Shown here in pieces: positions 30,116 through 58,770 of a stretch of 64,000 bases of DNA. The notes under the pieces are model-generated. The model searched no databases. It was not told the origin of the DNA and saw nothing but the letters and a program-made list of their open reading frames with translations. A program made the translations under genes and the position numbers. The stretch comes from Bispira polyomma. Lineage: Eukaryota. The stretch lies in the NCBI GenBank assembly GCA_965649765.1, contig OZ287756.1, positions 45,508,001-45,572,000 on the forward strand. The letters run 5' to 3'. Within the stretch, counting starts at the first letter, position 1. Every line of letters starts with the position of its first letter.

Positions 30116-30465
30116 CTACATATTTGTCTGTAAGGGGGTATATTTTTTGTTCTCTTCCAGTTCAACCCTACTAGTCTGTTCATACAGATAAGGCTGTTCA
30201 TACAGATAAGGCTCTTCTTTGTTCACCATCTTCATTACTTGGATATGACCTGGATCAATTATATCATACACATCCCTATTGGGTCCATCATTGACATCAT
30301 TTCTCTCTGTTGGTGGTGCTATCTCAGTGCTGTCATTAGTTGTTTGCTTTAGACTGGGCTTTGATCTCTTACACTTTATAATCAGAAATACTGTTAACAT
30401 GACACTTATTAACAACAGTGTCATGGAGATCACTACGGCAATCACAACTGTGTTGGAATTTTTCT
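30116..30465 (-). CDS. Terminal exon: transmembrane helix and cytoplasmic tail
   Basis: tttag|AG acceptor; [24 protein letters not shown] then KCKR stop-transfer; [25 protein letters not shown] on the minus strand at ~29944-29957. Confidence 0.85.
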
Positions 30466-33400
30466 CTAAAACATATAGGATAAATTGTGTATGTTGCTCA
30501 TTAATATGTATACGTAAGACTGTGTTTCTATGTAGCAGATGACAGACAATTGATATTTGACAGAATCATTTTGTTTAGTTTTATAAAAAGTGGTTCGCCT
30601 CCCACAAGTGACCAATGCTGTGGGCCTGTCCCAATATGACCCTGACTGGTAAACGGGACGTAAAACCCTAAACTTTGACTTTTATAAAAAGTGCCCATGT
30701 ACCAGATGATGACCTGTGAGCTTGGAATGAAGTAATCATGTTGACAATCTGGTACTCGGACACATAGGCTAAGTGGTATTGTGGTGATAGGATGTAATTG
30801 TAATTAGACTTTTATTGCACTTAATCTCCCCTTAACAAAGGGGACTCTAGGGCGCACCAGCACAAAAGACAGTTATCCAATTTACTAATTCAAGAGACAG
30901 AAAAGGGTCAGCACCATAGAGCGCGCCGGGGGATGATTGAGACTAAGGTGGATATGCTTTAGTGTACAAGTGTGTTTTAAGCTGCTTTCTAAAACAGGCT
31001 AGTGAAGGGGAAGCACGAATCACATCAGGAAGAGCATTCTAAACAATGGCAGCATCAAAAGCAAAGCTGTGACCAAACTGTTTAACCAACTTTTGAGTAG
31101 ATGGGTGGAACTTCAGAACAACAATGAAATTACCAACACTCTGACTACGTCTGGTATTGTAGGAACTACTGTAAGTGGAAAGATATGGGGCAAAATACTT
31201 TGGTAACCCAGTGTGGAGAAACTTATAAACAAGTGGTTCATCTCACCATGTATTGTGTCACATGTTTGCCCTGTCCAACCATCCAAACAGCCATGTTTAC
31301 AAAGACCAGTCACATGGTCACAGTTATCTTTGCAGTTTGGAAAACATTCAGAGATACATTTGTCTCCAAATCTTCCATCTGGACATTCTAAAAAATTTTA
31401 GTAGCAAGGAAAAAGTTAAAATAATAAAATAACTTTTAGTAATTTTGCAATTAACAATAAAACGTTATTTGTAGGCGACTTGGTATTGCAATGACACTCT
31501 TGCCTGACACTCTAGCCTGTAGATCCTGTATATTAAGTTTGAGTAAAGCATTCAATAGAAAACAAGAGACACAGCACAGCAACATGTGACCTTGAATGTT
31601 TATCCTTATTTTGAATTAAAACATGTTTATTGATGTACATAAACAGGCTTCCAATGTGAAATCTAATATTAAGGAACACATTAGATTTGTACCATCTACA
31701 GATGCACATTCTTCCCCTGTTATTTACCTTCTGTGCAGTTATATCCCAGAAATCCGGGAGAACATTGCCCATCTTTACAGTACCCTGTCACTTTATCACA
31801 TGGCAATATATGGCAGTTGAAAGAACATATCTGGCAACCATATCCAAATGTATTATAAGGACATTCTGTAATATAAATAATAAATTATTACCTCTGCTAG
31901 GAGGCTGGGGCAAAGAGGAATTCATAAAATTACAGTGTACATAGCGTTACATGGCAAAAAATTGAAAAACATTCCTGCAAGATTAAGCAAAAACTAGTGA
32001 ACCAATATCGATAAAACTGGGTAGAGAACTACCATGTGCCAAGGAAGGATCCAAATCAATTTGATAGAATACACATTATGGTGGTGCGAGGTTAAACAAT
32101 AAAAGCATTTGGAATACCATTCCTTTGGGTAGCGTGAAATTATCTTGAAGGTAAGTATGGAGAAGGTAGGAAAAAGATCTGTGTTTGCAGAATTTATTCT
32201 GTACACAGCTCTATGCACATATTGTTATAAAAGTTTAGTTTAAAATTATAACTTTTGTAAAATTTTAAAATATAACATGACTAGCATGTCTGATGAGTGT
32301 AAACGGAGTTAAATTTGAGTGAGTCCTAGAATTACATTTAGAATATTTAAGATAATGCCCAATCCCCTTAACAACACACAGTAAGTTACTCACAATACAT
32401 TTATAGGTCCAGTCTCTTAACAGGTTTAATTACTCGGCCAAAACTGGAAAGTTGTTCACCATTAGCACTTACATTGGTAGACTCACTTTTTCACAACTAC
32501 GATTTAAAATAGTTTGATTTTTAAGTTCTGATTCACCATTAACTCTAAAGTTTTGATTTTCTTGCCTAGAATTTGTAATTTTCTGCAAATACTTCCTGTT
32601 GTGGCGAAAAAGAGAATCACCTGTATCAACCACATATCAACCTTTCATTTTGTTTATCAACAACAGTGTATTTTTCACTTAAATGTTTATCACCTGGAAT
32701 TTTGACTCTTATATTGCCACCTGTTTGCAAACTTGGTAAACCTTTGACCCCATGACGCTTGTCATAGTCAAATTTTATCTTGGACTTCATCACATCACCT
32801 TTAGCTTTAACTAGCCTGGTGTCAACAGATTTAAGCACCAAATTTGCATCAAGTGTTGGTAATGTTGCTCTCAATTTCCTACCAAACCACAATTCTGAAG
32901 CACAAAATCCAGCGACAGAATGTGATGTAGATCTACAAGCAAGAAGCGCTAGATAAAGATCAGGAGTAGACAAAATTATCTTGGCTGTCTAAACAGCTAT
33001 TTCTGCCTCACAATTGCTAATAGCATGGTATGAACTGAACACACTTGTGAATTTGTATATGTTGGCAAATTGTGCATATTATTTACTATTGAATGGTGGA
33101 CCATTGTCAGAGACTAGCTCTGTACATAAACCAAATCTGGTCATGATTCCCTTCAATTTACCAATAACAACAGAAGAGGTTGCCCTGGACAATTCACAGA
33201 TTTCATTAAATCTAGAATAATAGTCTACCACAACCAAATACTTTTTGCTGTTAAAATCAAACAAATCAGTTCCTAATTTCTCTAATGGACCGTTGGGAAG
33301 ACAGGTTGGAATTATTGGTTCACAACGTTGATTTGGCCACAATTTACAATTTTCAATAACTGATTTGATGTCAGTAGTGATCCTAGGCCTCCACACAGTG

Positions 33401-36400
33401 TCATAGGCTCTCAGTGTCATAAACACTTTGAAATACCTTGACGCCCATCGTGTATTCTATCCAAAATTACACTATGCATGCCAACTGGTACAACAACTCT
33501 ACAACCATGGAATAACAAACTGTTACGGTATGACAAATAATTTTTGACATGAAAATAACATTTCACAGGATTTGAGCAATCTATCTCCTGTGTATGCCAA
33601 CCCATCATAACACAACCAATAACTTTTTGCATATCAGGATCGTCACTTGTACAGTCACTGAGACCACTAAATCTCTTGTCTGATGCTGGCTGGAAATACA
33701 TGCACTACACTATCCACATGAGCTTGAATATCTTCATCCAGATTATCACATGAATTGGTCACAGGAAGTGGTTTGTGAGATAGGGCATCTGCAACTGCTA
33801 GATACTTTCCTGGGATATACTCTGCAACAGCCTTTTACTTCATCATATGAATGAGTAATCGTTAAATGTGTAGTGGTGCACCCTCTTAACTTTTGTGATT
33901 TAGTAGAGGTGTCAAGGGTTTATGATCAGTCTGCAGTTTGAATCTTTCCAATCCAATGAGATATCTCGAGAATTTCTCACAAGCAAAAATGGCTGCATAA
34001 CACTTTTTCTCTATTTGAGCGTAATGGCTTTAACATTTTGGAACAAAAGGCTTCTGGACAGTTGTTCTGTAATAACACTGCACCTACGCCATAGCTTGAG
34101 GCATCTGCAGACACAACCGTCTCCTTTATAGGATCAAAATACCCTAATGTAGGAGTGCTGGAAATTAGTGTCTTGACATTTTCAAAAGCTTATTCCTGCC
34201 CGATATCCCAACACCAGATTTTGTTACCTTAAAGTAATTCTGTTATGGACTAAAAGATATGTTGTAGGTTTTCTTTGAAGCGTCCGAGATAACTCCCCAT
34301 TCCAATTAACTCACGAACCTCAGTGATGTTGTATGGTGGGGGCAATTCCTTGATTGCCTTGACCTTCTCTTCATTAACCGACATACCTTTGGCACTAAAC
34401 TTGTGACCCAAATAGGTAACCTTGGACTGCTTAAACTTGCATTTTGACTTGTTTAGCTTTAGTCCAACATCTTGTATCTTGTGAAGGACTGCCTTTAATG
34501 TATTGTCATGTTCACCTTTGTCTTTTCCATATACCAGTATGTCATCAATAGAGAGAAAAAGGTAGAGAGAAAAGGGAGAGAATACCTAAAGTGATTAAGG
34601 TAGGGCTAATACTTTTTATTATTCAAGTGTGAGAGATTTGTATAAATTATGAAATATATATTAGTTACAGTTAGTATTGACTGCTAGTTTTCTGGACAAG
34701 CTGCATTGGAAAATGGTTTCATATGTATATAATATATACAATAATATAATCTGCTCATTAATAAATAATATTTTAGTTAGTATTGACTGTTATTAGATAA
34801 GCCATGTTGTCATTACTTACCCTCTGTACACTTTTCACCGATATAGCTTCTACTACAGCTGTCACAGTTTCCCGTGATATGATGACATTCCCCATCTTTA
34901 CAGTTTACCGGACACAATTCACCACAGTCATAACCATAGAAACCATTTGGACAGACTGTGTGATCAAGTGATTTCATACATAGAATATGTCAGTCATAAA
35001 AAAATAATTTAATCAGATATACTTTTATTAGAAATTGAAATGAATACTACTGCTAGTTAAAAAGTACAGGAGCTAACTAACTACACAGCCTGAAGAGCAG
35101 GTTCCATACAGAGACACTTTAGCACATCAATCAATAAAATTGATAGAACAAGACTTTGCACAGTTATAACCATCAGTTTTATCTAGACATTCTGAGAAAA
35201 GAAAAATAATTTGGAAACCAGCAAATGAGTCAGAAACCATATGTAAAACCAATCAGTATGTGTAAATCAGAGTGTATTAACCTGTTGTACATATTTTTCC
35301 TTCATAGCCAAGGTCACACCCATCCTGACAAGTTCCTTCTACTGGGTCACATGTTGTATTATCCCTGCAGTTGCCACATTTGTTGTCACAATTGTCTCCC
35401 CATCTACTGTTACAAACTGAAAAGAGTACACTAGTACTGTTAGCAAAGTTAAAGCTTTGACTTATTTATTCTTCCATAACATTGCACCGATCCTTTATCA
35501 TATGATATTGTTGGCTCAATGTATAGATATCTTTCTAATTCTCACGAAAATAAAGCAACAACAATTATGATATCATCAACTTAAGGTAACATAAGGTTAC
35601 CCTGTGTGACGTAAGCTGATCAAGCAAAGATATCCCTAAATTTGTGTATTTGATGTATGAATCTATTGGATCACAGTTTAATGATTTGCTTACAATCTAG
35701 TAACTCAGATGGTAGTAACTCAGATAAGCAACATCATACTATGTGGTAAAAATTTACATTTTTACCTGGTTCTTGGTATTCTAAATAAACAAGGCCAATG
35801 AATTTACAAATAAACTTTTAGAGATATGTATTATAAATTAGACAGAAACACTTTACAGTGGTTTATATTTTTAATTTTTTTTTTACTTTCTAACTGAGCT
35901 ACAATATGGCTATTTCTTTATCTAAGACAGCCTTTAGGACCACAATACAGCATGAGTGTAAAGTTAATATTCTCCATATAGATAAGAACTGTGTGTCACC
36001 ACCACGTCTGGTGTAATAATCTATTTCTTTGACTTCAGCATTTTCTTGGAAAGACAGGGTTTTAAAGAGTTGAAAAGATAATCCTGCTTTTTGAGGCATG
36101 TCGGAAACTCCTGCTCGTGGATCCCCATCAACTGTCCCACAGTCTAATAATCAAATTGATGCATTGTTTAATTATATTAACTGTAATCTCAGTGTTCAAT
36201 TTTTTAGTAAAGAAAATAAGGACTATATAAATTACACAGCAAAAGTATTTTACTTAAGTGGACATTTAGATATTACAAAGTATTACAATAGTATCTAGTT
36301 ACCTTCATACACTATAAAATTATTTACATGAATTTAACTACCTTCCATGTCAAAGAAATTACAATATGGAACACTTTGGGAACCATCACAACATTTTCCT

Positions 36401-39400
36401 GTCATTATATGGCACATTTTCTTGCTGAGTGTGCTGCAGGTATAGGGACACATATGTTCACAGTTTATACCACAGGAACCTTGTGGACAGGCTAAAACAT
36501 GTAAAATGACAAAAAATGTAAGTTATAATCAGTGAAAGCCTTTTCTCATCTATTGTAATTATTATGTAATAAACTTGTTGTTTATGCATAATTTGTGTTC
36601 AGTGATGTTTTTGCATATTTTGTGTTCAGTGAGTGTTTTGATTTGCCTTCTGCCTTCAATTATTTCTCTCCATTAATTTTAAAATATTTGTCACTCGGGT
36701 AATTTTCCTAACGTATAACATACAGAATAATGTAGAAACTAAGACATGAAAATATTTCAATTATTTATTCAGACTACTAAAATCTGAATATATGAAATAG
36801 TATTCACAAATATAGTGCCTTACATGTTTACTTATATTATTGGCTTTGTTGTGAGAGTTTTATTCACATACGTTTTCTGGCGTATTTTTACAAAAAGTAA
36901 TGCTACATCAAGTAAATTTTGCCCACCTAAAGTGACTCTACTTTTTACAAGATAACCACTTATTTGTAAACATATTATGTTATCTGTCATTTCTGCTAAA
37001 CAGACATTATCTTGTATCTAAGAATGAGTTTGTCCAATTTTAATATGTTTACATTATTCCTGGTTAATCCTGTACAATATCCGTTATCTTGTAATATTTA
37101 TGTTTAAAATTTAATTAGTAAAACTAAATGAAAAACTAGTCCAAAATGAAGTATCAAGATATTACCAAAAAGTAACCAAAATATTCAACTTTGACCTATC
37201 TTACTTGAGTAAACACTAAGTGATCCATCTCCTCCACAGATGTCACCACTGTTGTCACTACACTGTGTGTTACATTGGTCTGAGATGCCGTGTTTGCTAA
37301 AGTCTTCTCCACAGTGACATTCTCTCCCAGCCTAGTGGTAAGATATTTAGATGATTAGTGATTATTTATGCACACCTGTTTCAAAAGTCGTTTTTAAGTA
37401 ATCAGTTGTTTCAAATATTTATTGTGGGTATTTAAAAAACTCATGGCACTAAATAAACTACATGTCTAATTCTATTCATTTCTGGGAACTTCACAATAAT
37501 ATAACTGAGTGTAAAGAATAAATGTTTTAAATTTAGAATATAACCAAACAATTATTTTTAAAAGTTTTTGGAAGCTGTATATGTACATCAATTGTTCAAT
37601 GTATATTTTATAAAACACTGGTTGTTAAATACTCTAGTCATACATAATAGAGGTATCTAATCTTATCTTCTATATTCTATTATTGTTCATATTATAGTCA
37701 TTGCTGTAAAGTGGCTGGTTGATGCAAAATAGTGATAAACTTTAAATTACAGGCATCTGCAGAACCTGTAAATCTGTTTTCCAAAATTAATTAATGATTA
37801 ATACTACCTTGAGACCAGAAAATGTATATTTGTTGCTTTTACAGAAATTCAAGCAATCACTAATTGAAGTTGTTAGAGATTGTTCACTTGTAATTATGGT
37901 CATTGCATAGGTAGATTCTTCATCTTTGTAACACCCTATGGACTGGGAATCTGAAACATAAACATAGATCTATACAGGCCTACTTATCGGTTAAATGATC
38001 ACAACATAGCTATTATCTTGGCATCATCTTGAGATATGGCATAACATATCATTAAGAACTAAAACTGTAGTCTATGATGTGCAATAGTATTTAGTAAAGG
38101 AAACCCAACCATATACAAGAGTTTATTCAATGTAGGTCATAAGCAAAGAAGCACACAATAGCCCTGAAAAAGTTTTTATGCTAAACATGTCGAATATTTA
38201 CGCATTTGTGTCACAGTTTGTGCCAATAATAGTTACTGGTTATATGATGTATTATGGTAAAAGTTGCACTGGCAAAAATCTCATTTTTGTTTCACCTTGA
38301 CGTAACAGACAGAAAATTTAATGTTGCAAAACTACCTAATACACTCTACAATTATAGTAGACATTAAGGCACTGACATTCTGAAAAATCATGTTTTTGTT
38401 ACCCCCAAAAGTCTTCAATTATGCCACCAGTTGTCCTTGAAAGGTGTAAAAGGTCAGAGGAATGTCAAAGTAATATGGAAAGTGGTATGTAGTTATGCAT
38501 AGGATGTAGTAAAACTATGATTTGCGATATTTATTAGTGTACACCGTTAATTCTGTATATGTATACACAAATAGTGTTAAAAATATATCAATTTTAAAAT
38601 ATATGAAAGAATTTTTAAAAGACCCAACACATATGTGATAGTCATTAACATAACATGAGGACATCAGAACCTTATAAGGACAAGCCATACATAAACAAGA
38701 CATCATATCGGTATATCCCAATGGCTGAGTTAGAAGAACATGCAATTTCCTCCGGTATCAACTTCTCCGTCTCAATGTAATGACAGCCTTACAGCCAACA
38801 TTGATAATAACCACATCAAGGTCCCTTTATAGTCAACCTTGTAACAAATTAGACAACACACCTTGTCATTCAGTTATTTTAAATGAGCCAACATAGTTAT
38901 ATCAAGAAATCATTTACTAAACAAAGCCAGCATAGTGTGTCGAGCACGACAACTTTAGCGGTAGAATACTGTCTGATATACTAATATCACTGCCAAATTG
39001 GCCCAAGTTATGTTCATGTAAAGTCACACTAAATGCAACAGACAACAAAAGTAAGATCCAAAGTATTACGCTGCATCCACAAAATATTCCTCTCTGTCTT
39101 AATTAACTACCTTTTTGGTGTGCATAAAACATACCTTCATTACATTTAAATCCTTGATATCCAGTTGCACATCCACTAGGACAAGTTCCATCCACAAAGT
39201 GACAGATGTCATTGCTTTTACAATTGTGACAGTCATTGCCACAGTCACTACCATACTTGCCAATTGGACAGCCTACCAGATATCATACAGAGAAAGATTA
39301 TAATTGGAATATTTAGATTTTCATTTACCGAATAACAAAAAATAAGATAGCAATCCAAAAACATAATCAACTTTTTTGTAATAGTATTTATAATTATGTT

Positions 39401-42400: not shown

Positions 42401-45400
42401 TTACAGAAATTCAAGCAATCACTAATTGAAGTTGTTAGAGATTGTTCACTTGTAATTATGGTCATTGCATAGGTAGATTCTTCATCTTTGTAACACCCTA
42501 TGGACTGGGAATCTGAAACATAAACATAGATCTATACAGGCCTACTTATCGGTTAAATGATCACAACATAGCTATTATCTTGGCATCATCTTGAGATATG
42601 GCATAACATATCATTAAGAACTAAAACTGTAGTCTATGATGTGCAATAGTATTTAGTAAAGGAAACCCAACCATATACAAGAGTTTATTCAATGTAGGTC
42701 ATAAGCAAAGAAGCACACAATAGCCCTGAAAAAGTTTTTATGCTAAACATGTCGAATATTTACGCATTTGTGTCACAGTTTGTGCCAATAATAGTTACTG
42801 GTTATATGATGTATTATGGTAAAAGTTGCACTGGCAAAAATCTCATTTTTGTTTCACCTTGACGTAACAGACAGAAAATTTAATGTTGCAAAACTACCTA
42901 ATACACTCTACAATTATAGTAGACATTAAGGCACTGACATTCTGAAAAATCATGTTTTTGTTACCCCCAAAAGTCTTCAATTATGCCACCAGTTGTCCTT
43001 GAAAGGTGTAAAAGGTCAGAGGAATGTCAAAGTAATATGGAAAGTGGTATGTAGTTATGCATAGGATGTAGTAAAACTATGATTTGCGATATTTATTAGT
43101 GTACACCGTTAATTCTGTATATGTATACACAAATAGTGTTAAAAATATATCAATTTTAAAATATATGAAAGAATTTTTAAAAGACCCAACACATATGTGA
43201 TAGTCATTAACATAACATGAGGACATCAGAACCTTATAAGGACAAGCCATACATAAACAAGACATCATATCGGTATATCCCAATGGCTGAGTTAGAAGAA
43301 CATGCAATTTCCTCCGGTATCAACTTCTCCGTCTCAATGTAATGACAGCCTTACAGCCAACATTGATAATAACCACATCAAGGTCCCTTTATAGTCAACC
43401 TTGTAACAAATTAGACAACACACCTTGTCATTCAGTTATTTTAAATGAGCCAACATAGTTATATCAAGAAATCATTTACTAAACAAAGCCAGCATAGTGT
43501 GTCGAGCACGACAACTTTAGCGGTAGAATACTGTCTGATATACTAATATCACTGCCAAATTGGGCCAAGTTATGTTCATGTAAAGTCACACTAAATGCAA
43601 CAGACAACAAAAGTAAGATCCAAAGTATTACGCTGCATCCACAAAATATTCCTCTCTGTCTTAATTAACTACCTTTTTGGTGTGCATAAAACATACCTTC
43701 ATTACATTTAAATCCTTGATATCCAGTTGCACATCCACTAGGACAAGTTCCATCCACAAAGTGACAGATGTCATTGCTTTTACAATTGTGACAGTCATTG
43801 CCACAGTCACTACCATACTTGCCAATTGGACAGCCTACCAGATATCATACAGAGAAAGATTATAATTGGAATATTTAGATTTTCATTTACCGAATAACAA
43901 AAAATAAGATAGCAATCCAAAAACATAATCAACTTTTTTGTAATAGTATTTATAATTATGTTGTTACATATATAGTACTATTTAATATACATTTTTTATT
44001 TTATTACATATAATAAATGTACTGGTTCAAGTTATAGGTATTTGTGTCACTGACTCGTTGCTTAAGGAAAATATCAATCAGAATAGCTTTGTTTTGATCT
44101 GAAGGAATAAATTATTGTAGAACTTTCAACTACTACACTTGTTTTCATTGATGTTTTCACATTGTATAATTTGTGGTATTAATGTTTTTTTTCCTGTATA
44201 ACACAAATCTAACTACACGTAAGTCATGTGTCACACATTGTCAAATAACAATGATTGTGAATTATTAAAACTGTTATGATTAGGTCACAGAAATATTACT
44301 GAATGGCCTAATTTATATGGAATATATATTCTATGCTGTAAATAATTACTATTATACTACATACCTTTTATATACAATTGAATTTCAATGCTACTGATGC
44401 AGTTTTCTTTTTCGCCGTAATTAAAGACACAGTACGAGTGTACCCAGGCTTCCAGTTATTCCCACTTGGACTAAAAAACCCGATTTCATGCAGTTCTGAT
44501 TGTAAAATACCTGATGGTAGGTTGCTTGTTGTGGAGTAAGGAATCATGTTTGCTTCTAAATTTGATGAGGGATAGTGAAGAGCAATAGCATCTCCACTTT
44601 GTACATGCAGCCTTTCGTCTGTGGACAGGCTAAGGGTCTAAAATGAAATGGGAAATATTGAGCTACTCAGTCAAAGGAAACATCAGCGTATACATTTACC
44701 ATATAGATGCAAAAAATGTGAAGCTCTGATATGTGCAATATAGCAATGAAGCAGAACAGTGTCCCTAAAGTTTTTACCATCACCACAGTAGGTATATGTA
44801 TGTATTACACATACAGTAAGGGGCCAGTTAGTTGCAATCACTAAACTTTTACTTATGAGAACAGTAATTATATACAGTGGTTGGTGGTTTCCTGTAACAC
44901 ATTCCTATTTGTACTAGTTTCCTCCTACCCCAAATATCTGCCTATTGATATATGATGTAGGATGTTGGAAGTGATGTAAACCCCCAAAAAGCAAACTGAA
45001 TGCTTAGAAAACAGCGAATTACAACCTGTATCCCTTCGTTAGTTGGTGATAGTTCCAGTTTTGCCACCATCATATACTTTTCATCTTGTAGTTTTCTCCA
45101 TATAGATAAGAACTGTGTGTCACCACCACGTCTGGTGTAATAATCTATTTCTTTGACTTCAGCATTTTCTTGGAAAGACAGGGTTTTAAAGAGTTGAAAA
45201 GATAATCCTGCTTTTTGAGGCATGTCGGAAACTCCTGCTCGTGGATCCCCATCAACTGTCCCACAGTCTAATAATCAAATTGATGCATTGTTTAATTATA
45301 TTAACTGTAATCTCAGTGTTCAATTTTTTAGTAAAGAAAATAAGGACTATATAAATTACACAGCAAAAGTATTTTACTTAAGTGGACATTTAGATATTAC

Positions 45401-48400
45401 AAAATATTACAATAGTATCTAGTTACCTTCATACACTATAAAATTATTTACATGAATTTAACTACTTTCCATGTCAAAGAAATTACAATATGGAACACTT
45501 TGGGAACCATCACAACATTTTCCTGTCATTATATGGCACATTTTCTTGCTGAGTGTGCTGCAGGTATAGGGACACATATGTTCACAGTTTATACCATAGG
45601 AACCTTGTGGACAGGCTAAAACATGTAAAATGACAAAAAATGTAAGTTATAATCAGTGAAAGCCTTTTCTCATCTGTTGTAATTATTATGTAATAAACTT
45701 GTTGTTTATGCATAATTTGTGTTCAGTGATGTTTTTGCATATTTTGTGTTCAGTGAGTGTTTTGATTTGCCTTCTGCCTTCAATTATTTCTCTCCATTAA
45801 TTTTAAAATATTTGTCACTCGGGTAATTTTCCTAATGTATAACATACAGAATAATGTAGAAACTAAGACATGAAAATATTTCAATTATTTATTCAGACTA
45901 CTAAAATCTGAATATATGAAATAGTATTCACAAATATAGTGCCTTACATGTTTACTTATATTATTGGCTTTGTTGTGAGAGTTTTATTCACATACGTTTT
46001 CTGGCGTATTTTTACAAAAAGTAATGCTACATCAAGTAAATTTTGCCCACCTAAAGTGACTCTACTTTTTACAAGATAACCACTTATTTGTAAACATATT
46101 ATGTTATCTGTCATTTCTGCTAAACAGACATTATCTTGTATCTAAGAATGAGTTTGTCCAATTTTAATATGTTTACATTATTCCTGGTTAATCCTGTACA
46201 ATATCCGTTATCTTGTAATATTTATGTTTAAAATTTAATTAGTAAAACTAAATGAAAAACTAGTCCAAAATGAAGTATCAAGATATTACCAAAAAGTAAC
46301 CAAAATATTCAACTTTGACCTATCTTACTTGAGTAAACACTAAGTGATCCATCTCCTCCACAGATGTCACCACTGTTGTCACTACACTGTGTGTTACATT
46401 GGTCTGAGATGCCGTGTTTGCTAAAGTCTTCTCCACAGTGACATTCTCTCCCAGCCTAGTGGTAAGATATTTAGATGATTAGTGATTATTTATGCACACC
46501 TGTTTCAAAAGTCGTTTTTAAGTAATCAGTTGTTTCAAATATTTATTGTGGGTATTTAAAAAACTCATGGCACTAAATAAACTACATGTCTAATTCTATT
46601 CATTTCTGGGAACTTCACAATAATATAACTGAGTGTAAAGAATAAATGTTTTAAATTTAGAATATAACCAAACAAGTATTTTTAAAAGTTTTTGGAAGCT
46701 GTATATGTACATCAATTGTTCAATGTATATTTTATAAAACACTGGTTGTTAAATACTCTAGTCATACATAATAGAGGTATCTAATCTTATCTTCTATATT
46801 CTATTATTGTTCATATTATAGTCATTGCTGTAAAGTGGCTGGTTGATGCAAAATAGTGATAAACTTTAAATTACAGGCATCTGCAGAACCTGTAAATCTG
46901 TTTTCCAAAATTAATTAATGATTAATACTACCTTGAGACCAGAAAATGTATATTTGTTGCTTTTACAGAAATTCAAGCAATCACTAATTGAAGTTGTTAG
47001 AGATTGTTCACTTGTAATTATGGTCATTGCATAGGTAGATTCTTCATCTTTGTAACACCCTATGGACTGGGAATCTGAAACATAAACATAGATCTATACA
47101 GGCCTACTTATCAGTTAAATGATCACAACATAGCTATTATCTTGGCATCATCTTGAGATATGGCATAACATATCATTAAGAACTAAAACTGTAGTCTATG
47201 ATGTGCAATAGTATTTAGTAAAGGAAACCCAACCATATACAAGAGTTTATTCAATGTAGGTCATAAGCAAAGAAGCACACAATAGCCCTGAAAAAGTTTT
47301 TATGCTAAACATGTCGAATATTTACGCATTTGTGTCACAGTTTGTGCCAATAATAGTTACTGGTTATATGATGTATTATGGTAAAAGTTGCACTGGCAAA
47401 AATCTCATTTTTGTTTCACCTTGACGTAACAGACAGAAAATTTAATGTTGCAAAACTACCTAATACACTCTACAATTATAGTAGACATTAAGGCACTGAC
47501 ATTCTGAAAAATCATGTTTTTGTTACCCCCAAAAGTCTTCAATTATGCCACCAGTTGTCCTTGAAAGGTGTAAAAGGTCAGAGGAATGTCAAAGTAATAT
47601 GGAAAGTGGTATGTAGTTATGCATAGGATGTAGTAAAACTATGATTTGCGATATTTATTAGTGTACACCGTTAATTCTGTATATGTATACACAAATAGTG
47701 TTAAAAATATATCAATTTTAAAATATATGAAAGAATTTTTAAAAGACCCAACACATATGTGATAGTCATTAACATAACATGAGGACATCAGAACCTTATA
47801 AGGACAAGCCATACATAAACAAGACATCATATCGGTATATCCCAATGGCTGAGTTAGAAGAACATGCAATTTCCTCCGGTATCAACTTCTCCGTCTCAAT
47901 GTAATGACAGCCTTACAGCCAACATTGATAATAACCACATCAAGGTCCCTTTATAGTCAACCTTGTAACAAATTAGACAACACACCTTGTCATTCAGTTA
48001 TTTTAAATGAGCCAACATAGTTATATCAAGAAATCATTTACTAAACAAAGCCAGCATAGTGTGTCGAGCACGACAACTTTAGCGGTAGAATACTGTCTGA
48101 TATACTAATATCACTGCCAAATTGGGCCAAGTTATGTTCATGTAAAGTCACACTAAATGCAACAGACAACAAAAGTAAGATCCAAAGTATTACGCTGCAT
48201 CCACAAAATATTCCTCTCTGTCTTAATTAACTACCTTTTTGGTGTGCATAAAACATACCTTCATTACATTTAAATCCTTGATATCCAGTTGCACATCCAC
48301 TAGGACAAGTTCCATCCACAAAGTGACAGATGTCATTGCTTTTACAATTGTGACAGTCATTGCCACAGTCACTACCATACTTGCCAATTGGACAGCCTAC

Positions 48401-51400
48401 CAGATATCATACAGAGAAAGATTATAATTGGAATATTTAGATTTTCATTTACCGAATAACAAAAAATAAGATAGCAATCCAAAAACATAATCAACTTTTT
48501 TGTAATAGTATTTATAATTATGTTGTTACATATATAGTACTATTTAATATACATTTTTTATTTTATTACATATAATAAATGTACTGGTTCAAGTTATAGG
48601 TATTTGTGTCACTGACTCGTTGCTTAAGGAAAATATCAATCAGAATAGCTTTGTTTTGATCTGAAGGAATAAATTATTGTAGAACTTTCAACTACTACAC
48701 TTGTTTTCATTGATGTTTTCACATTGTATAATTTGTGGTATTAATGTTTTTTTTCCTGTATAACACAAATCTAACTACACGTAAGTCATGTGTCACACAT
48801 TGTCAAATAACAATGATTGTGAATTATTAAAACTGTTATGATTAGGTCACAGAAATATTACTGAATGGCCTAATTTATATGGAATATATATTCTATGCTG
48901 TAAATAATTACTATTATACTACATACCTTTTGTATACAATTGAATTTCAATGCTACTGATGCAGTTTTCTTTTTCGCCGCAATTAAAGACACAGTACGAG
49001 TGTACCCAGGCTTCCAGTTATTCCCACTTGGACTAAAAAACCCGATTTCATGCAGTTCTGATTGTAAAATACCTGATGGTAGGTTGCTTGTTGTGGAGTA
49101 AGGAATCATGTTTGCTTCTAAATTTGATGAGGGATAGTGAAGAGCAATAGCATCTCCACTTTGTACATGCAGCCTTTCGTCTGTGGACAGGCTAAGGGTC
49201 TAAAATGAAATGGGAAATATTGAGCTACTCAGTCAAAGGAAACATCAGCGTATACATTTACCATATAGATGCAAAAAATGTGAAGCTCTGATATGTGCAA
49301 TATAGCAATGAAGCAGAACAGTGTCCCTAAAGTTTTTACCATCACCACAGTAGGTATATGTATGTATTACACATACAGTAAGGGGCCAGTTAGTTGCAAT
49401 CACTAAACTTTTACTTATGAGAACAGTAATTATATACAGTGGTTGGTGGTTTCCTGTAACACATTCCTATTTGTACTAGTTTCCTCCTACCCCAAATATC
49501 TGCCTATTGATATATGATGTAGGATGTTGGAAGTGATGTAAACCCCCAAAAAGCAAACTGAATGCTTAGAAAACAGCGAATTACAACCTGTATCCCTTCG
49601 TTAGTTGGTGATAGTTCCAGTTTTGCCACCATCATATACTTTTCATCTTGTAGTTTTCTCCATATAGATAAGAACTGTGTGTCACCACCACGTCTGGTGT
49701 AATAATCTATTTCTTTGACTTCAGCATTTTCTTGGAAAGACAGGGTTTTAAAGAGTTGAAAAGATAATCCTGCTTTTTGAGGCATGTCGGAAACTCCTGC
49801 TCGTGGATCCCCATCAACTGTCCCACAGTCTAATAATCAAATTGATGCATTGTTTAATTATATTAACTGTAATCTCAGTGTTCAATTTTTTAGTAAAGAA
49901 AATAAGGACTATATAAATTACACAGCAAAAGTATTTTACTTAAGTGGACATTTAGATATTACAAAGTATTACAATAGTATCTAGTTACCTTCATACACTA
50001 TAAAATTATTTACATGAATTTAACTACCTTCCATGTCAAAGAAATTACAATATGGAACACTTTGGGAACCATCACAACATTTTCCTGTCATTATATGGCA
50101 CATTTTCTTGCTGAGTGTGCTGCAGGTATAGGGACACATATGTTCACAGTTTATACCATAGGAACCTTGTGGACAGGCTAAAACATGTAAAATGACAAAA
50201 AATGTAAGTTATAATCAGTGAAAGCCTTTTCTCATCTATTGTAATTATTATGTAATAAACTTGTTGTTTATGCATAATTTGTGTTCAGTGATGTTTTTGC
50301 ATATTTTGTGTTCAGTGAGTGTTTTGATTTGCCTTCTGCCTTCAATTATTTCTCTCCATTAATTTTAAAATATTTGTCACTCGGGTAATTTTCCTAATGT
50401 ATAACATACAGAATAATGTAGAAACTAAGACATGAAAATATTTCAATTATTTATTCAGACTACTAAAATCTGAATATATGAAATAGCATTCAGAAATATA
50501 GTGCCTTACATGTTTACTTATATTATTGGCTTTGTTGTGAGAGTTTTATTCACATACGTTTTCTGGCGTATTTTTACAAAAAGTAATGCTACATCAAGTA
50601 AATTTTGCCCACCTAAAGTGACTCTACTTTTTACAAGATAACCACTTATTTGTAAACATATTATGTCATCTGTCATTTCTGCTAAACAGACATTATCTTG
50701 TATCTAAGAATGAGTTTGTCCAATTTTAATATGTTTACATTATTCCTGGTTAATCCTGTACAATATCCGTTATCTTGTAATATTTATGTTTAAAATTTAA
50801 TTAGTAAAACTAAATGAAAAACTAGTCCAAAATGAAGTATCAAGATATTACCAAAAAGTAACCAAAATATTCAACTTTGACCTATCTTACTTGAGTAAAC
50901 ACTAAGTGATCCATCTCCTCCACAGATGTCACCACTGTTGTCACTACACTGTGTGTTACATTGGTCTGAGATGCCGTGTTTGCTAAAGTCTTCTCCACAG
51001 TGACATTCTCTCCCAGCCTAGTGGTAAGATATTTAGATGATTAGTGATTATTTATGCACACCTGTTTCAAAAGTCGTTTTTAAGTAATCAGTTGTTTCAA
51101 ATATTTATTGTGGGTATTTAAAAAACTCATGGCACTAAATAAACTACATGTCTAATTCTATTCATTTCTGGGAACTTCACAATAATATAACTGAGTGTAA
51201 AGAATAAATGTTTTAAATTTAGAATATAACCAAACAAGTATTTTTAAAAGTTTTTGGAAGCTGTATATGTACATCAATTGTTCAATGTATATTTTATAAA
51301 ACACTGGTTGTTAAATACTCTAGTCATACATAATAGAGGTATCTAATCTTATCTTCTATATTCTATTATTGTTCATATTATAGTCATTGCTGTAAAGTGG

Positions 51401-51636
51401 CTGGTTGATGCAAAATAGTGATAAACTTTAAATTACAGGCATCTGCAGAACCTGTAAATCTGTTTTCCAAAATTAATTAATGATTAATACTACCTTGAGA
51501 CCAGAAAATGTATATTTGTTGCTTTTACAGAAATTCAAGCAATCACTAATTGAAGTTGTTAGAGATTGTTCACTTGTAATTATGGTCATTGCATAGGTAG
51601 ATTCTTCATCTTTGTAACACCCTATGGACTGGGAAT
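30116..51636 (-). CDS. Multi-exon type-I membrane receptor (WSC + MEGF10/Draper-like EGF repeats + unassigned domain, TM, Tyr-motif tail); signal-peptide exon not found in window
   Basis: GT-AG exons 5'->3': A 51494-51636, B 50891-51017 (WSC), C 50028-50177 (EGF), D 49588-49829, E 48927-49199, F 48259-48396 (EGF), repeated at -4562 steps. Then EGF exons 35282-35416, 34821-34955, 31728-31865, 31247-31387 and TM exon 30116-30465. A+B, C, F and the EGF exons are stop-free phase 1-1 modules. Confidence 0.8.
30593..30679 (+). mobile_element. 5'-truncated SINE 3' end with 14-bp TSD
   Basis: TTTTATAAAAAGTG at 30579-30592 and 30680-30693; ends GGGACGTAAAACCC...CTTTGAC. Confidence 0.75.
30800..31115 (-). 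mobile_element. L2 3'-end fragment (intronic)
   Basis: [45 protein letters not shown], homologous to the end of ORF 21518-22231. Confidence 0.8.
31247..31387 (-). CDS. EGF-like exon (8 Cys)
   Basis: [47 protein letters not shown]; AG/GT, 141 nt. Confidence 0.9.
31728..31865 (-). CDS. EGF-like exon
   Basis: [46 protein letters not shown]; 138 nt. Confidence 0.9.
32400..34550 (-). mobile_element. Decayed Ty3/Gypsy LTR-retrotransposon pol (RT-RNase H-integrase), intronic; LTRs not evident
   Basis: [10 protein letters not shown]...KLNKSKCKF...[57 protein letters not shown]; RT-RH-IN order. Confidence 0.9.
34821..34955 (-). CDS. EGF-like exon
   Basis: [44 protein letters not shown]; 135 nt. 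Confidence 0.9.
35282..35416 (-). CDS. EGF-like exon
   Basis: [44 protein letters not shown]; 135 nt. Confidence 0.88.
48259..48396 (-). CDS. Exon F, EGF-like (also 43697-43834, 39135-39272)
   Basis: [45 protein letters not shown]. Confidence 0.88.
48927..49829 (-). CDS. Exons D (49588-49829) and E (48927-49199): ~170-aa unassigned beta-rich extracellular domain; frame-incompatible with exon F
   Basis: DCGTVDGDP...[28 protein letters not shown]...EGIQ|[23 protein letters not shown]...IPY...KFNCIQK; 242+273=515 nt. Confidence 0.65.
50028..50177 (-). CDS. Exon C, EGF-like (also 45466-45615, 40904-41053, 36342-36491)
   Basis: [49 protein letters not shown]. Confidence 0.85.
50891..51636 (-). 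CDS. Exons A (51494-51636) and B (50891-51017): WSC carbohydrate-binding domain (also 46329-47074, 41767-42512, 37205-37950)
   Basis: SIGCYKDEE...[17 protein letters not shown]|AGRECHCG...[24 protein letters not shown] fits the WSC consensus (GCY.D...C..FC...GL...ECxCG...C...C.G....CGG....SVY). Confidence 0.9.
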
Positions 51637-52650
51637 CTGAAACATAAACATAGATCTATACAGGCCTACTTATCGGTTAAATGATCACAACATAGCTATT
51701 ATCTTGGCATCATCTTGAGATATGGCATAACATATCATTAAGAACTAAAACTGTAGTCTATGATGTGCAATAGTATTTAGTAAAGGAAACCCAACCATAT
51801 ACAAGAGTTTATTCAATGTAGGTCATAAGCAAAGAAGCACACAATAGCCCTGAAAAAGTTTTTATGCTAAACATGTCGAATATTTACGCATTTGTGTCAC
51901 AGTTTGTGCCAATAATAGTTACTGGTTATATGATGTATTATGGTAAAAGTTGCACTGGCAAAAATCTCATTTTTGTTTCACCTTGACGTAACAGACAGAA
52001 AATTTAATGTTGCAAAACTACCTAATACACTCTACAATTATAGTAGACATTAAGGCACTGACATTCTGAAAAATCATGTTTTTGTTACCCCCAAAAGTCT
52101 TCAATTATGCCACCAGTTGTCCTTGAAAGGTGTAAAAGGTCAGAGGAATGTCAAAGTAACATGGAAGGTGGTATGTAGTTATGCATAGGATGTAGTAAAA
52201 CTATGGTTTGCGGTATTTATTAGTGTACACCGTTAATTCTGTATATGTATATACAAATAGTCTTAAAAATATATTTAAAAAATTTTAAAATATATGAAAG
52301 AATTTTTAAAAGACCCAACACATATGTGATAGTCATTAACATAACATGAGGACATCAGAACCTTATAAGGACAAGCCATACATAAACAAGACATCATATC
52401 GGTATATCCCAATGGCTGAGTTAGAAGAACATGCAATTTCCTCCGGTATCAACTTCTCCGTCTCAATGTAATGACAGCCTTACAGCCAACATTGATAATA
52501 ACCACATCAAGGTCCCTTTATAGTCAACCTTGTAACAAATTAGACAACACACCTTGTCATTCAGTTATTTTAAATGAGCCAACACAGTTATATCAAGAAA
52601 TCTTTTAACTAGACGAAGCCAGCATAGTGTGTCGAGCACGACAACTTTAG

Positions 52651-57432: not shown

Positions 57433-57679
57433 GTGGGTCGTGATTTTCTGTCATAAAGACTAACATTTGGGACTTTTGGGGACATATTGAAACTTACTTA
57501 AAACAAATTCTCTTATTCACAGACCTACTTGATATGAACTAACACTGATAGTGACATGTCATAACCCTTGCTAACATATGCTCACATATCTCCATTCATC
57601 TCTGTCACAAGTCACAGTGAGCAAAAATTAATTTCAATACTTTACTGGTTTTTGTATATTTTTGAAAGTTATTGGAATT

Positions 57680-58770
57680 TCATATGATATCACGCCTTAA
57701 TTATTGGTTGACACAGAACTGGAAGAAGAGAAGGCTCTGGGTTCAATCGTAACTATTTCGACACCTCATATACAATCAGTACGACCACTTAATGGCTGAG
57801 TTTGAGAAGCATGACATCAATTAATTCTAAAACTTTATCAGGGTTGATCCAATATTATTCAGAGAGTTACTCAACAGCATTGGACGTACAATAACCACAA
57901 ATAAGTATACCTTTTTAGAGCTACCCGAATTAAAGTTGTAGACTGGCCATCACATTCAGACATTTAACCAGTGGCAACAGCTACAGATCTCTATCTTATG
58001 GCTTATGGGTTTCACACTATCCACAGCAATATCATGGAAGGCCAGCGTAGATGAGTACATGCACAAAATCCACAGCATTATCAAGGAAGGTCAGCGTGGA
58101 TGAGTACATGCACAGGGTTATCCATCTACCCAACACCCTGATGGAACTTTCACAACACCTTGGGTGCCCTTCTAATAGTGGTTCACTGTATTACAACCAC
58201 AAAGGCTTCTTCTCCATTATCATTCTGGCACTAATGGATGCAGACTATAAGTTTTTCTGGTTGGATGCTGACAGTAACATGCCCTATCCAGATGCACAGA
58301 TCTATAAATATTGTGCACACAAACACAAGATCAATAATGACACCATTACCCTGACAGAGTTATGCCATACTTTACCATAGCTGACGATGGGTTCTCCAAG
58401 TGTGGCTTACCTGTTGTGGAGAGGATGTTTTAATATAGACTCATGAGAGCCAGGAGAATCGTAGAGAATGCTTTCAGAATCCTGGCAAACTATTTCAGTT
58501 GCCTAACTATCAGCCCCTAGCAGGACTCTGATGTCCTTACAAACTTAGTATTGGCCTGTTGTCGATTTCACAACATAATAAGATTGAGATATGCACAGAT
58601 ACACAAGGAACTTTTGGACAGTGAGGATCCTAACAAAAGTGTCGTGTTTTAACAATGGAGGACCAGGGCAAATATTTCAAACAGTACTACAACAACCCAT
58701 TAGGACCAGTGCCCTGGCAAAGGAATATGATCTGAACTGTTATCAATTGATAAACTCTAATTTCTCGAAT
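57680..58770 (+). mobile_element. Decayed Harbinger transposase
   Basis: RRRLWVQ, YDHLMAEFEKHD..NFIRVDP..FRELL, GSLYYNHKGFFSIIILALMDADYKF, NYRLMRARRIVENAFRILAN. Confidence 0.85.

What the first reader, a model, noticed from the sequence alone, without database searches (positions are those of the whole stretch)
30116..51636. Candidate glycan-sensing phagocytic/immune receptor whose ectodomain is being multiplied by whole exon-block duplication
Seen: a six-exon block (WSC, EGF, unassigned domain, EGF) repeated at exactly 4,562 bp upstream of four more EGF exons, a TM helix and a Tyr-motif tail. The WSC pair and EGF exons are stop-free symmetric phase-1 modules. Skipping D/E gives an open frame of ~1,000 aa: (WSC-EGF-EGF)x3-WSC-EGF-EGFx4-TM. 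Established: WSC binds carbohydrates such as beta-glucan, and MEGF10/Draper/SCARF-type EGF receptors mediate engulfment. Inference: a very recent, possibly copy-number-polymorphic way to tune avidity of a pattern-recognition receptor. The ORF track misses nearly all of it.
Basis: partly seen in the sequence, partly recalled or inferred. Interest (0 to 1): 0.8.

Follow-up and report, generated by a model that had tools for sequence, protein, structure and literature searches.

The report
Tandem exon-block array in decaying receptor gene
A 4.6-kb block of exons for a sugar-binding WSC module and EGF stalk modules really is repeated 3.7 times inside a membrane-receptor-like gene of this invertebrate, but the gene is a patchwork made at the edge of large genome duplications, one exon is broken in every copy and its nearest relatives are dead genes, so it is more likely a young gene relic than a receptor being tuned.

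Summary
A 4,562-bp unit is repeated 3.66 times (35970-52654) at 99.2-99.9% identity. It lies on the minus strand, upstream of four more EGF exons and a TM/Tyr-tail exon that ends at 30116. The exon phases allow an open chain of about 996 codons if exons D and E are skipped.

The adaptive reading is weakly supported.
1. D+E is a constitutive lectin-like beta-jelly-roll domain of the family, not an optional block. Exon E carries a frame-breaking TA insertion in all three copies here.
2. The gene is a chimera. Window 3310-35972 is a 99.3% copy of another family member's 3' half. It is joined by a 3-bp-microhomology junction that cuts an exon D.
3. The three closest relatives carry frameshifts, stops or lost cysteines.
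4. No signal-peptide exon was found; a 4.6-kb transposon abuts the array.
5. No RNA run exists.

Contig k-mer depth in three runs argues against assembly over-expansion. A near-identical counterpart locus has two units, so copy number does vary.

The likeliest reading is a real, young tandem array in a probably non-functional member of a lineage-restricted WSC-EGF-jelly-roll-EGF-TM family. That family has at least 46 exon-D matches on one chromosome. The scan had already noted the disabled D/E exons and the transposon at the array's edge on this same DNA.

The parts
35970..52654 (.). Tandem array of a 4,562-bp unit, 3.66 copies: 35970-40531, 40532-45093, 45094-49655 and the partial copy 49656-52654. 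In + orientation it reads Y(XY)(XY)(XY), where Y is unit 1-2993 and X is unit 2994-4562.
   Evidence: 99.2-99.9% identity, spacing exactly 4562
37808..37950 (-). WSC-a exon, first half of the WSC domain, phase 1 to 0. Also at 42370-42512, 46932-47074 and 51494-51636. A second acceptor at 37942 would give phase 0.
   Evidence: Pfam WSC positions 2-45, 25.9 bits; splice sites; four identical copies in the genome search
37205..37331 (-). WSC-b exon, second half of the WSC domain, phase 0 to 1. Also at 41767-41893, 46329-46455 and 50891-51017.
   Evidence: Pfam WSC positions 47-82, 22.8 bits; donor CAA|GTAAGA
36342..36491 (-). EGF-B exon, phase 1 to 1. Also at 40904-41053, 45466-45615 and 50028-50177. 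Copies 1 and 2 have Tyr to Cys in the CPxGxYG motif. Copy 3 has G to A at the last exon base.
40464..40705 (-). Exon D, first half of the jelly-roll domain, phase 1 to 0, open in all copies. It straddles the unit boundary at 40531/40532. Also at 45026-45267 and 49588-49829.
   Evidence: aligns to Owenia P0011 418-480, E 3e-5
35970..36143 (-). Truncated fourth exon D, cut by the junction with the pasted-in 3' half.
   Evidence: the reading frame departs from the D sequence right after ...SIWR at 35970
39803..40075 (-). Exon E, second half of the jelly-roll domain. Also at 44365-44637 and 48927-49199. All three copies carry a TA insertion relative to the paralogs. It gives an in-frame TAA in copies 1 and 2 and a phase-0 end in copy 3. 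Copy 1 has also lost its acceptor (AG to AA at 40076).
   Evidence: alignment with four paralog copies that keep ...CIKG|gtatgt
39135..39272 (-). EGF-A exon, phase 1 to 1. Also at 43697-43834 and 48259-48396.
30116..35416 (-). 3' half of the gene: EGF-C 35282-35416, EGF-D 34821-34955, EGF-E 31728-31865, EGF-F 31247-31387, and the TM plus Tyr-tail exon 30119-30465 with its stop at 30116-30118.
   Evidence: The TM exon is 100% identical to C9:45912600-45913046.
35969..35972 (.). Breakpoint between the copy of the B-type paralog's 3' region (window 3310-35972) and the A-type array. The two sides share the 3-bp microhomology TTC.
38962..38963 (.). Duplication-specific junction Y(2993)|X(2994), blunt. 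Also at 43524|43525 and 48086|48087. The same junction is present at C9:23.27 Mb.
52655..57252 (.). A 4.6-kb dispersed transposon that abuts the 5' end of the array. It sits at the same place in the A-type paralogs.
   Evidence: copies on at least nine chromosomes at 83-96%; its ORFs gave no Pfam hit
32629..34585 (-). Fragment of an LTR-retrotransposon pol gene (RT, RNase H, integrase) in the intron between EGF-D and EGF-E.
   Evidence: RVT_1 3e-11, RT_RNaseH_2 6e-13, rve 2.5e-5

Best explanation
The array is real and young. It is a tandem multiplication of a six-exon block (jelly-roll exons D and E, EGF-A, WSC-a, WSC-b, EGF-B). The gene belongs to a lineage-restricted family of type-I membrane proteins whose normal architecture is WSC, EGF, lectin-like jelly-roll (D+E), five EGFs, a TM helix and a Tyr-motif tail.

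This copy is most likely a structurally rearranged, non-functional or decaying member rather than a receptor under selection.

Inferred history:
1. An A-type gene with a transposon just upstream of its WSC exon duplicated its X-Y block once through a blunt, non-homologous junction.
2. That two-unit state was copied into the inverted segmental duplication at 23.27 Mb.
3. In the window locus the internal unit was amplified further, probably by unequal crossing-over.
4. A TA insertion in exon E spread to all three copies.
5. The edge of a large direct segmental duplication (about 374.5 kb period) replaced the gene's own 3' end with a copy of a B-type paralog's 3' half, cutting an exon D.

Shown: the anatomy, the junctions, the lesions, the state of the relatives and the depth. 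Inferred: the order of events and the lack of function.
For: The array is real.
- Contig k-mer depth in three runs from two samples is about 95-125 in the unit against about 21-25 in the flank.
- Divided by the k-mer multiplicity in the assembly, that is 15-18.5 per copy in the unit against 13-14 in the flank. The reads therefore hold at least as many copies as the assembly.
- The Y|X junction occurs again at 23.27 Mb.
- Junctions are blunt or have 3-bp microhomology. They do not lie inside long repeats where an assembler would mis-join.

The gene is a chimera.
- Window 26000-35972 is 99.2% identical to C9:45908449-45918453, and window 3310-35972 is 99.3-99.9% identical.
- The array and its upstream flank are 97.6-99% identical to the A-type loci.

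The gene is decaying.
- Exon E has the TA insertion in all three copies. Copy 1 has lost its acceptor. One exon D is truncated.
- EGF-B has Tyr to Cys in two copies.
- A-type relatives are broken. The 45.36 Mb copy has a 2-bp deletion in EGF-A and a Cys to Phe change. The 46.02 Mb copy has an 8-bp deletion, a stop and a 16-bp deletion. The 23.27 Mb copy has a Cys to Tyr change, lacks its WSC exons and has stops in the TM exon.
- Exon divergence is 0.85-2.0% against 1.2-2.3% outside exons. pN/pS is 0.43-0.52 on 34 differences.

D/E is constitutive in the family.
- It is conserved and open in the B-type and other diverged paralogs and in another assembly.

No signal-peptide exon was found.
Against: - All WSC, EGF-B, EGF-A and D exons of the array are open, and their splice sites are canonical.
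- The 3' half is intact and identical in its exons to an apparently intact paralog.
- Skipping D/E restores one long frame.
- pN/pS below 1 leaves room for some constraint in the A-type lineage.
- Expression was not testable.
- A 5' exon could lie beyond the transposon, in the flank that all A-type loci share.
- Contig depth is a crude measure, and the runs come from the same study as, probably, the assembly.
Confidence: 0.6

Rival explanations
1. This is a working pattern-recognition or engulfment-type receptor whose ectodomain now carries four WSC modules on an EGF stalk. Exons D/E are skipped, and copy number tunes avidity.
For: - The phase-1 symmetry of the WSC pair, EGF-B and EGF-A gives an open chain of about 996 codons when D/E are skipped.
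- Copy 1's exon E has lost its acceptor, and the exon D donor (GTTGTA) is weak, which would favour skipping.
- The counterpart locus has two units, so copy number varies.
- WSC and the lectin-like fold of the family's D/E domain fit glycan sensing at the family level.
Against: - Copies 2 and 3 keep good D and E splice sites, so inclusion and a premature stop are the default outcome.
- The in-frame chain needs the 37950 acceptor rather than the tandem one at 37942.
- No signal-peptide exon was found, and a transposon abuts the array.
- All three closest relatives are pseudogenes.
- The gene is a chimera with a broken exon D at the joint.
- The tail has no NPxY motif and no ITAM spacing.
- There is no RNA evidence.
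Confidence: 0.15
2. The locus is transcribed with normal splicing and yields a short secreted or degraded product: WSC, EGF-B and a jelly-roll with a damaged C-terminus, ending in or just after the first exon E. The rest of the array would be untranslated. The product would be a decoy or a target of nonsense-mediated decay.
For: D and E of the 5'-most full unit keep canonical splice sites. In that unit (copy 3) TAA has changed to CAA, so the frame runs on and shifts into EGF-A.
Against: - It needs a promoter and a signal-peptide exon, which were not found.
- A stop that far upstream of many exon junctions would normally trigger nonsense-mediated decay (established knowledge).
- There are no RNA data.
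Confidence: 0.12
3. Assembly artefact. The array is over-expanded, or the L|Y junction at 35970 is a mis-join between two segmentally duplicated regions. The 23.15-23.29 Mb block may be a retained haplotig rather than a true duplication.
For: - The window sits where two families of large, 97-99.9% identical duplications meet. Such regions are hard to assemble.
- No listed contig bridges 35969|35970 or 38962|38963.
- The contigs carry the paralog form of exon E, without the TA, at full depth.
- In sample S2 the flank contig runs on into the B-type sequence.
Against: - Depth per assembled copy is not lower in the unit than in the flank.
- In sample S1 the flank contig stops exactly at 35972, as expected at a real branch.
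- The joint has only 3 bp of shared sequence, and there are no Ns.
- The copies carry their own substitutions in a pattern that fits stepwise growth.
- Contigs drop minority variants by construction.
Confidence: 0.08

Closest known systems
Scavenger receptor class F (SCARF1/SREC) and Tie-type EGF stalks
   Same: Both are type-I membrane proteins whose ectodomain is a string of 8-cysteine, laminin-like EGF repeats of about 45 residues. A profile of the window's EGF exons hits SCARF1 (8hna, 4e-6) and Tie2 (2gy5, 2e-5).
   Different: SCARF and Tie proteins have no WSC and no jelly-roll domain. The tail here is short (about 85 residues), has its own conserved YDII/PYLYE/YTPL motifs and has no kinase. 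Orthology was not tested.
CED-1 / Draper / MEGF10-11 / PEAR1 engulfment receptors
   Same: Many atypical EGF repeats, a single TM helix and tyrosine motifs in the tail. Each EGF repeat is a phase-1 exon.
   Different: No EMI domain was found. There is no NPxY motif. YDII and YTPL are about 41 residues apart, which is not an ITAM. A WSC and a jelly-roll head replace EMI.
Kremen1/2 and other animal WSC proteins
   Same: An extracellular WSC domain in a single-pass membrane protein. The jelly-roll domain of this family also occurs in Kringle-rich proteins of the annelid Owenia.
   Different: There is no Kringle or CUB domain in this gene. The WSC here is followed by EGF repeats.
Cwp84 'Lectin_like' (PF18560) / DUF4082 / CBM-type beta-jelly rolls
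   Same: The D+E-type domain, modelled on the Owenia homologue with the family's exons in the alignment (pLDDT 94.5), superposes on the 4ci7 lectin-like domain (Z 9.6), on phage decoration domains (Z 10-11) and on an esterase CBM-like domain (Z 8.8). Atlas clusters give TM 0.65-0.74.
   Different: There is no sequence similarity: Pfam and PDB sequence searches were blank. A shared fold does not show sugar binding. In the window gene the domain is broken.
Intragenic exon-block tandem duplications and chimeric genes at segmental-duplication breakpoints
   Same: Exact periodicity, near-identical units, edge copies more diverged than inner ones, blunt or microhomology junctions, and fusion of parts of two paralogs.
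   Different: Nothing unusual in kind. The special point is that both ends of the array coincide with other structural events: a transposon on one side and a segmental-duplication edge on the other.

Membership tests
WSC domain (Pfam PF01822) | Match to the WSC profile over its whole length, with the conserved cysteines | tested here: met
   Exon WSC-a matches profile positions 2-45 (25.9 bits, E 1.2e-5) and WSC-b matches 47-82 (22.8 bits, E 1.1e-4). The two matches are collinear and complementary. Each half alone is below the 27.8-bit cut-off. The joined domain was not scored.
SCARF/MEGF/Tie-type (laminin-like, 8-Cys) EGF repeats | CPxGxFGxxCxxxCxxxCxxxxxCxxxxGxC..C..G..G..C pattern and a significant profile match to solved members | tested here: met
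   Alignment A2 has nine invariant Cys/Gly columns. hmmsearch against PDB gives 6u11 at 3e-8, SCARF1 at 4e-6 and Tie2 at 2e-5. Single exons reach only E 0.003-0.7 against Pfam EGF_laminin and EGF_STAB1-2.
CED-1/Draper/MEGF10 engulfment receptors | N-terminal EMI domain | tested here: inconclusive
   None of the exons scanned gave an EMI hit. The 5' end of the gene was not found. In the family the N-terminal module seen is WSC.
CED-1/Draper/MEGF10 engulfment receptors | NPxY and YxxL (or ITAM) signalling motifs in the tail | tested here: not met
   The tail reads ...RDVYDIIDP...[14 protein letters not shown]...[10 protein letters not shown]. There is no NPxY, and the two YxxI/L motifs are about 41 residues apart.
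Type-I single-pass membrane protein | One hydrophobic helix followed by a basic stop-transfer stretch, plus an N-terminal signal peptide | tested here: inconclusive
   The helix [25 protein letters not shown] followed by KCKRSK is present. No signal-peptide exon was found within 1 kb upstream of WSC-a, and none was convincing up to 64000.
Young tandem (exon-block) duplication | Exact period, near-identical units, one recurrent novel junction, and read support for the copy number | tested here: met
   Period and identity. Identical Y|X junction three times in the window and once at 23.27 Mb. k-mer depth per assembled copy of 15-18.5 in the unit against 13-14 in the flank. The depth comes from contigs and is crude.
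Unprocessed pseudogene / gene relic | Frame-disrupting lesions in constitutive exons | tested here: met
   TA insertion in exon E in all three copies, a truncated exon D at the joint, and a lost acceptor in copy 1. D/E is constitutive in the paralogs.
Unprocessed pseudogene / gene relic | No functional transcript or protein | not testable with these tools
   No RNA run holds the stretch. Only three DNA-like contig sets from one study were available.
Kremen (Kringle-WSC-CUB-TM) | Kringle and CUB domains flanking the WSC | tested here: not met
   No Kringle or CUB hit in any exon scanned. The neighbours of WSC are EGF exons.

The most novel reading that the evidence does not exclude
A chimeric gene born at the meeting point of two segmental duplications is expressed. 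By skipping the disabled jelly-roll exons it displays four WSC lectin modules on a lengthened EGF stalk. The number of units differs between haplotypes or loci (two at the 23.27 Mb counterpart, 3.66 here). That would be a case of receptor avidity being changed in real time by exon-block copy number.
Probability: 0.12. Interest if true: 0.65.

Novelty: new variant of a known kind. Interest (0 to 1): 0.33.

Why it matters
If the array were expressed in frame, it would be a rare caught-in-the-act example of domain multiplication in an invertebrate recognition receptor.

As it stands, the value is different.
1. The locus documents how exon-block arrays and chimeric genes arise at the edges of segmental duplications and transposons in a fast-evolving receptor cluster.
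2. It brings to light a lineage-restricted family (WSC, EGF, lectin-like jelly-roll, five EGFs, TM) with dozens of copies on one chromosome. Its middle domain has no Pfam entry and gave only 13 hits among 1.84 billion representative proteins.
3. It warns that stop-free, symmetric exons in units that differ by less than 1% say nothing about selection.

Tried and rejected
- **RNA evidence.** Expression and splicing could not be tested.
- **Signal-peptide exon.** An ab initio scan of 52000-64000 and of the 1 kb upstream of WSC-a gave nothing convincing.
  - blastn between the A-type and B-type upstream regions found nothing.
  - The 450-bp block conserved upstream of WSC-a in B- and C-type paralogs is as similar as the exon itself, so it does not single out an exon. 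One candidate (MESYAAILISL...) ends in phase 0, is absent from the B-type copy and has a stop in one copy.
- **Pfam on single EGF, D and E exons.** Nothing significant.
- **PDB sequence search** with the exon-E profile and with the Owenia domain was blank.
- **ESM Atlas by features** returned only unnamed invertebrate clusters at 0.87.
- **Single-sequence AlphaFold** of the Owenia domain gave pLDDT 43 and was discarded.
- **Word search for more homologues** of that domain found only two Owenia proteins.
- **Foldseek against PDB** gave no match at E <= 0.001.
- **Literature searches** for WSC plus EGF receptors in molluscs found nothing specific.
- **Joined protein.** I did not build, fold or search the spliced protein. 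All searches were exon by exon, by reference.
- **Rejected idea: homologous recombination between transposon copies made the Y|X junction.** The junction is blunt, with no transposon sequence and no shared bases.
- **Rejected idea: the 'goes back 4562' joint in the contigs proves the duplication.** X(4562) to Y(1) is the ancestral continuity and is also present in single-unit paralogs.


Full report
A direct repeat with start-to-start spacing of exactly 4562 bp is present.
- Base-by-base identity at that lag jumps from about 0.27 to 1.0 at 35970.
- BLAST of the unit against the window gives 35970-40531, 40532-45093 (99.91%), 45094-49655 (99.76%) and a partial fourth copy at 49656-52654 (99.2%, with a 5-bp indel).
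- That is 3.66 copies over 16.7 kb, and there are no Ns in the window.

**2. The gene is on the minus strand.** Six-frame inspection, splice-site reading and comparison with paralogs give these exons per unit, 5' to 3':
- D: 242 nt, phase 1 to 0
- E
- EGF-A: 138 nt, phase 1 to 1
- WSC-a: 143 nt, phase 1 to 0
- WSC-b: 127 nt, phase 0 to 1
- EGF-B: 150 nt, phase 1 to 1

Downstream of the array lie four more phase-1 EGF exons and a last exon, 30465..30119, with its stop at 30116-30118. That exon encodes a 25-residue hydrophobic helix, then KCKRSK, then a tail of about 85 residues with [18 protein letters not shown] and YTPL.

- The two WSC exons match complementary halves of Pfam WSC: positions 2-45 at 25.9 bits and 47-82 at 22.8 bits.
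- The EGF exons are not significant one at a time in Pfam.
- A profile of ten of them hits the EGF repeats of 6u11 (3e-8), SCARF1 (4e-6) and Tie2 (2e-5) among solved structures.
- With D and E left out, the exon lengths add up to 2990 nt in matching phases, about 996 codons.
- I derived this from lengths and phases only.

**3. D+E is a proper domain of the family, and it is broken here.**
- Exon-E-like ORFs occur at 20 places on the same chromosome. Thirteen of them are diverged (28-41% identity) and share a conserved pattern...LYVQTGD.aAlHY....nMIPYq...W.PG...tF....RtpAlqI.YdCIqG|.
- Exon-D-like ORFs occur at 46 or more places, all on contig C9, in three clusters: 23.15-23.29, 45.31-46.12 and 59.9-60.3 Mb.
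- A paralog at 45.918-45.927 Mb, here called B-type, shows the family architecture with everything open: WSC, EGF-B, D, E, EGF-A, four EGFs and the TM exon.
- A contig of another public assembly carries E followed by matching EGF exons.
- A profile of exon E found only 13 proteins among 1.84 billion representatives. Most were short ORF fragments, plus a 1025-residue Kringle-rich protein of the annelid Owenia fusiformis.
- Exon D aligns to that protein just upstream of the exon-E match (E 3e-5), and a second Owenia protein holds four copies. D+E therefore encode one domain of about 160 residues.
- Folded with a 21-row alignment that includes the window's and the paralogs' D and E translations, the Owenia copy gives a confident all-beta model (pLDDT 94.5, pTM 0.89).
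  - It is a jelly roll. The best structural matches are phage capsid and tail-tip decoration domains (Z 10-11), the lectin-like domain of Cwp84 (Z 9.6) and the CBM-like domain of acetylxylan esterases (Z 8.8).
  - PHR domains, F-type lectins, CBM32 and discoidin follow at Z 5-7.
  - Atlas clusters carrying Pfam Lectin_like or DUF4082 give TM 0.62-0.65; the best rows, 0.67-0.74, are unnamed bacterial clusters.
  - Fold alone does not show sugar binding.
- All three exon E copies in the window carry a TA insertion just before the donor. The four A-type paralog copies lack it and end ...CIKG|gtatgt, like the rest of the family.
  - The insertion gives an in-frame TAA in copies 1 and 2.
  - In copy 3, where TAA has become CAA, the exon ends in phase 0 and throws EGF-A out of frame.
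  - Copy 1 has also lost its acceptor (AG to AA).
- D is open in all three full copies, and both exons keep canonical splice sites in copies 2 and 3. Ordinary splicing would therefore terminate the protein after the first unit.
- The in-frame chain also needs the WSC-a acceptor at 37950 rather than the tandem one at 37942.

**4. The gene is a patchwork.**
- Window 26000-35972 is 99.2% identical to C9:45908449-45918453, and the match stops exactly at the low edge of the array.
- The copy extends at least from window 3310, at 99.3-99.9%.
- Matched pairs of family exons about 374.5 kb apart suggest that this is the end of a direct segmental duplication of 140 kb or more.
  - That size is inferred from coordinates and equal scores. 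Only 32.7 kb was verified directly.
- The array and everything upstream of it instead resemble A-type loci:
  - 45.36 Mb (98%) and 46.02 Mb (97%), each with a single X-Y unit;
  - 23.27 Mb (99%), with X-Y-X-Y and a deletion.
- The 23.15-23.29 Mb block is collinear, inverted and about 99% identical to 45.54-45.68 Mb: coordinate sums are about 68.83 million.
  - The 23.27 Mb locus is therefore the counterpart of the window's array. It has two units and keeps the original A-type 3' end.
- The joint at 35969|35970 shares only TTC between the two parents and cuts an exon D after ...SIWR.
- The duplication junction Y(2993)|X(2994) is blunt. It is identical in the three window copies and at 23.27 Mb.
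- Y(2993) is also where a 4.6-kb dispersed transposon begins in the window (52655) and in all A-type loci.
- Substitutions near the end of Y are shared by the inner copies and the inner 23.27 Mb copy. The terminal copy groups with the single-unit paralogs.
  - This fits one founding duplication before the 23.27/45.54 split, followed by amplification of the inner unit.

**5. The nearest relatives are dead genes**.
- 45.36 Mb: a 2-bp deletion in EGF-A and a Cys to Phe change in EGF-B.
- 46.02 Mb: an 8-bp deletion in EGF-B, a stop in D and a 16-bp deletion in E.
- 23.27 Mb: a Cys to Tyr change in EGF-A, the 5' WSC exons deleted, and two stops in the TM/tail exon.
- Between A-type loci, exons differ by 0.85-2.0% and non-exonic sequence by 1.2-2.3%.
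- pN/pS is 0.43-0.52 on 34 differences. This indicates relaxed constraint at best.
- Within the array, exon differences are few. They include a Tyr to Cys change at the conserved aromatic position of EGF-B (copies 1 and 2) and a G to A change at the last base of EGF-B (copy 3).

**6. Is it an assembly artefact?** Only three runs hold the stretch. They come from one study and two samples and are kept as contigs; none is RNA.
- Contig k-mer depth is about 21-25 on the flank and about 95-125 on the unit in sample S1.
- I counted how often each 31-mer of those contigs occurs in the window plus the fetched paralog loci. Depth per assembled copy is then 15-18.5 in the unit and 13-14 in the flank.
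- The reads therefore hold at least as many unit copies as the assembly, which argues against over-expansion. The tool warns that contig depth is crude.
- In S1 the flank contig stops exactly at 35972, as at a real branch. In S2 a B-type contig runs on into the B-type sequence, while a second contig carries the window's letters.
- No listed contig bridges the two novel junctions.
- The contigs carry the exon E form without the TA at full depth. This is expected if the four paralog copies outvote the three window copies, but it leaves the insertion unconfirmed by reads.

**7. 5' end.**
- No ATG-led hydrophobic exon with a suitable donor lies in the 1 kb between WSC-a and the transposon.
- Candidates further upstream are unconvincing.
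- Comparison with other paralogs did not single out an exon.

**8. Verdict.** This particular copy, however, shows a broken constitutive exon in every unit, a truncated exon at a pasted-in 3' half, dead sister copies, no detectable first exon and a transposon at its head.
- Most likely a young tandem array in a decaying chimeric gene: about 0.6.
- In-frame, exon-skipping receptor: about 0.15.
- Truncated secreted product: about 0.12.
- Assembly artefact: about 0.08.

Earlier scan notes on this same DNA had already flagged the disabled D/E exons (s1-596274) and the transposon at the array's edge (s1-596255).
- I confirmed the first for E only; D is intact.
- I confirmed the boundary named in the second, but not the tyrosine-recombinase nature of the element. 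Its ORFs gave no Pfam hit.

Noticed in passing
window 52655-57252; also C9:46064245, 45603097, 45704128: The same 4.6-kb dispersed transposon family lies 0.6-1 kb upstream of the WSC-a exon in the A-type loci. It lies at the same relative place in distant (C-type) family members whose WSC exon is only 47-49% identical. Copies elsewhere in the genome are not next to WSC exons. This could reflect a target preference or an old shared insertion.
   Followed up: partly
window 30793-31235: A dispersed repeat of about 443 bp, 95-96% identical to more than 15 copies on many chromosomes (SINE- or MITE-like). It sits in the last intron and ends 12 bp from the donor of exon EGF-F.
   Followed up: no
window 32629-34585 (-): A fragment of an LTR-retrotransposon pol gene (RT, RNase H, integrase) in the intron between EGF-D and EGF-E. 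It is also present in the 45.91 Mb copy.
   Followed up: partly
C9:23.15-23.29 Mb vs 45.54-45.68 Mb; C9:45.40-45.544 vs 45.78-45.918 Mb: Two very large near-identical duplications of the receptor cluster. One is inverted and 22 Mb away at about 99% identity. The other is direct with a period of about 374.5 kb at about 99.3%. They are either true segmental duplications or retained haplotigs. The window's array sits where they meet.
   Followed up: partly
C9:59.9-60.3 Mb: A third, more distant cluster of exon-D-like ORFs (32-33% identity). The jelly-roll domain family is therefore larger than the WSC-EGF genes studied here.
   Followed up: no
L030 (ENA ERZ22147071, ctg30678l, 403714-424025): Another public assembly carries an exon E homologue followed by EGF exons close to the window's EGF-A, EGF-E and EGF-F. 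The family therefore exists outside this genome. No WSC or D exon was seen in the 10 kb upstream.
   Followed up: partly
P0011 / P0014 (Owenia fusiformis, NCBI CAH1786992.1 and a second unnamed product): Annelid proteins combine several copies of the same unassigned jelly-roll domain with Kringle domains. One of them also has AbfB and Methyltransf_FA domains. The domain has no Pfam model.
   Followed up: partly
window 38417-38934 (unit 2448-2965): The last 0.5 kb of segment Y is itself a dispersed repeat (81-89% to copies on other chromosomes). It is the part of the unit where the terminal copy differs most from the inner copies.
   Followed up: partly
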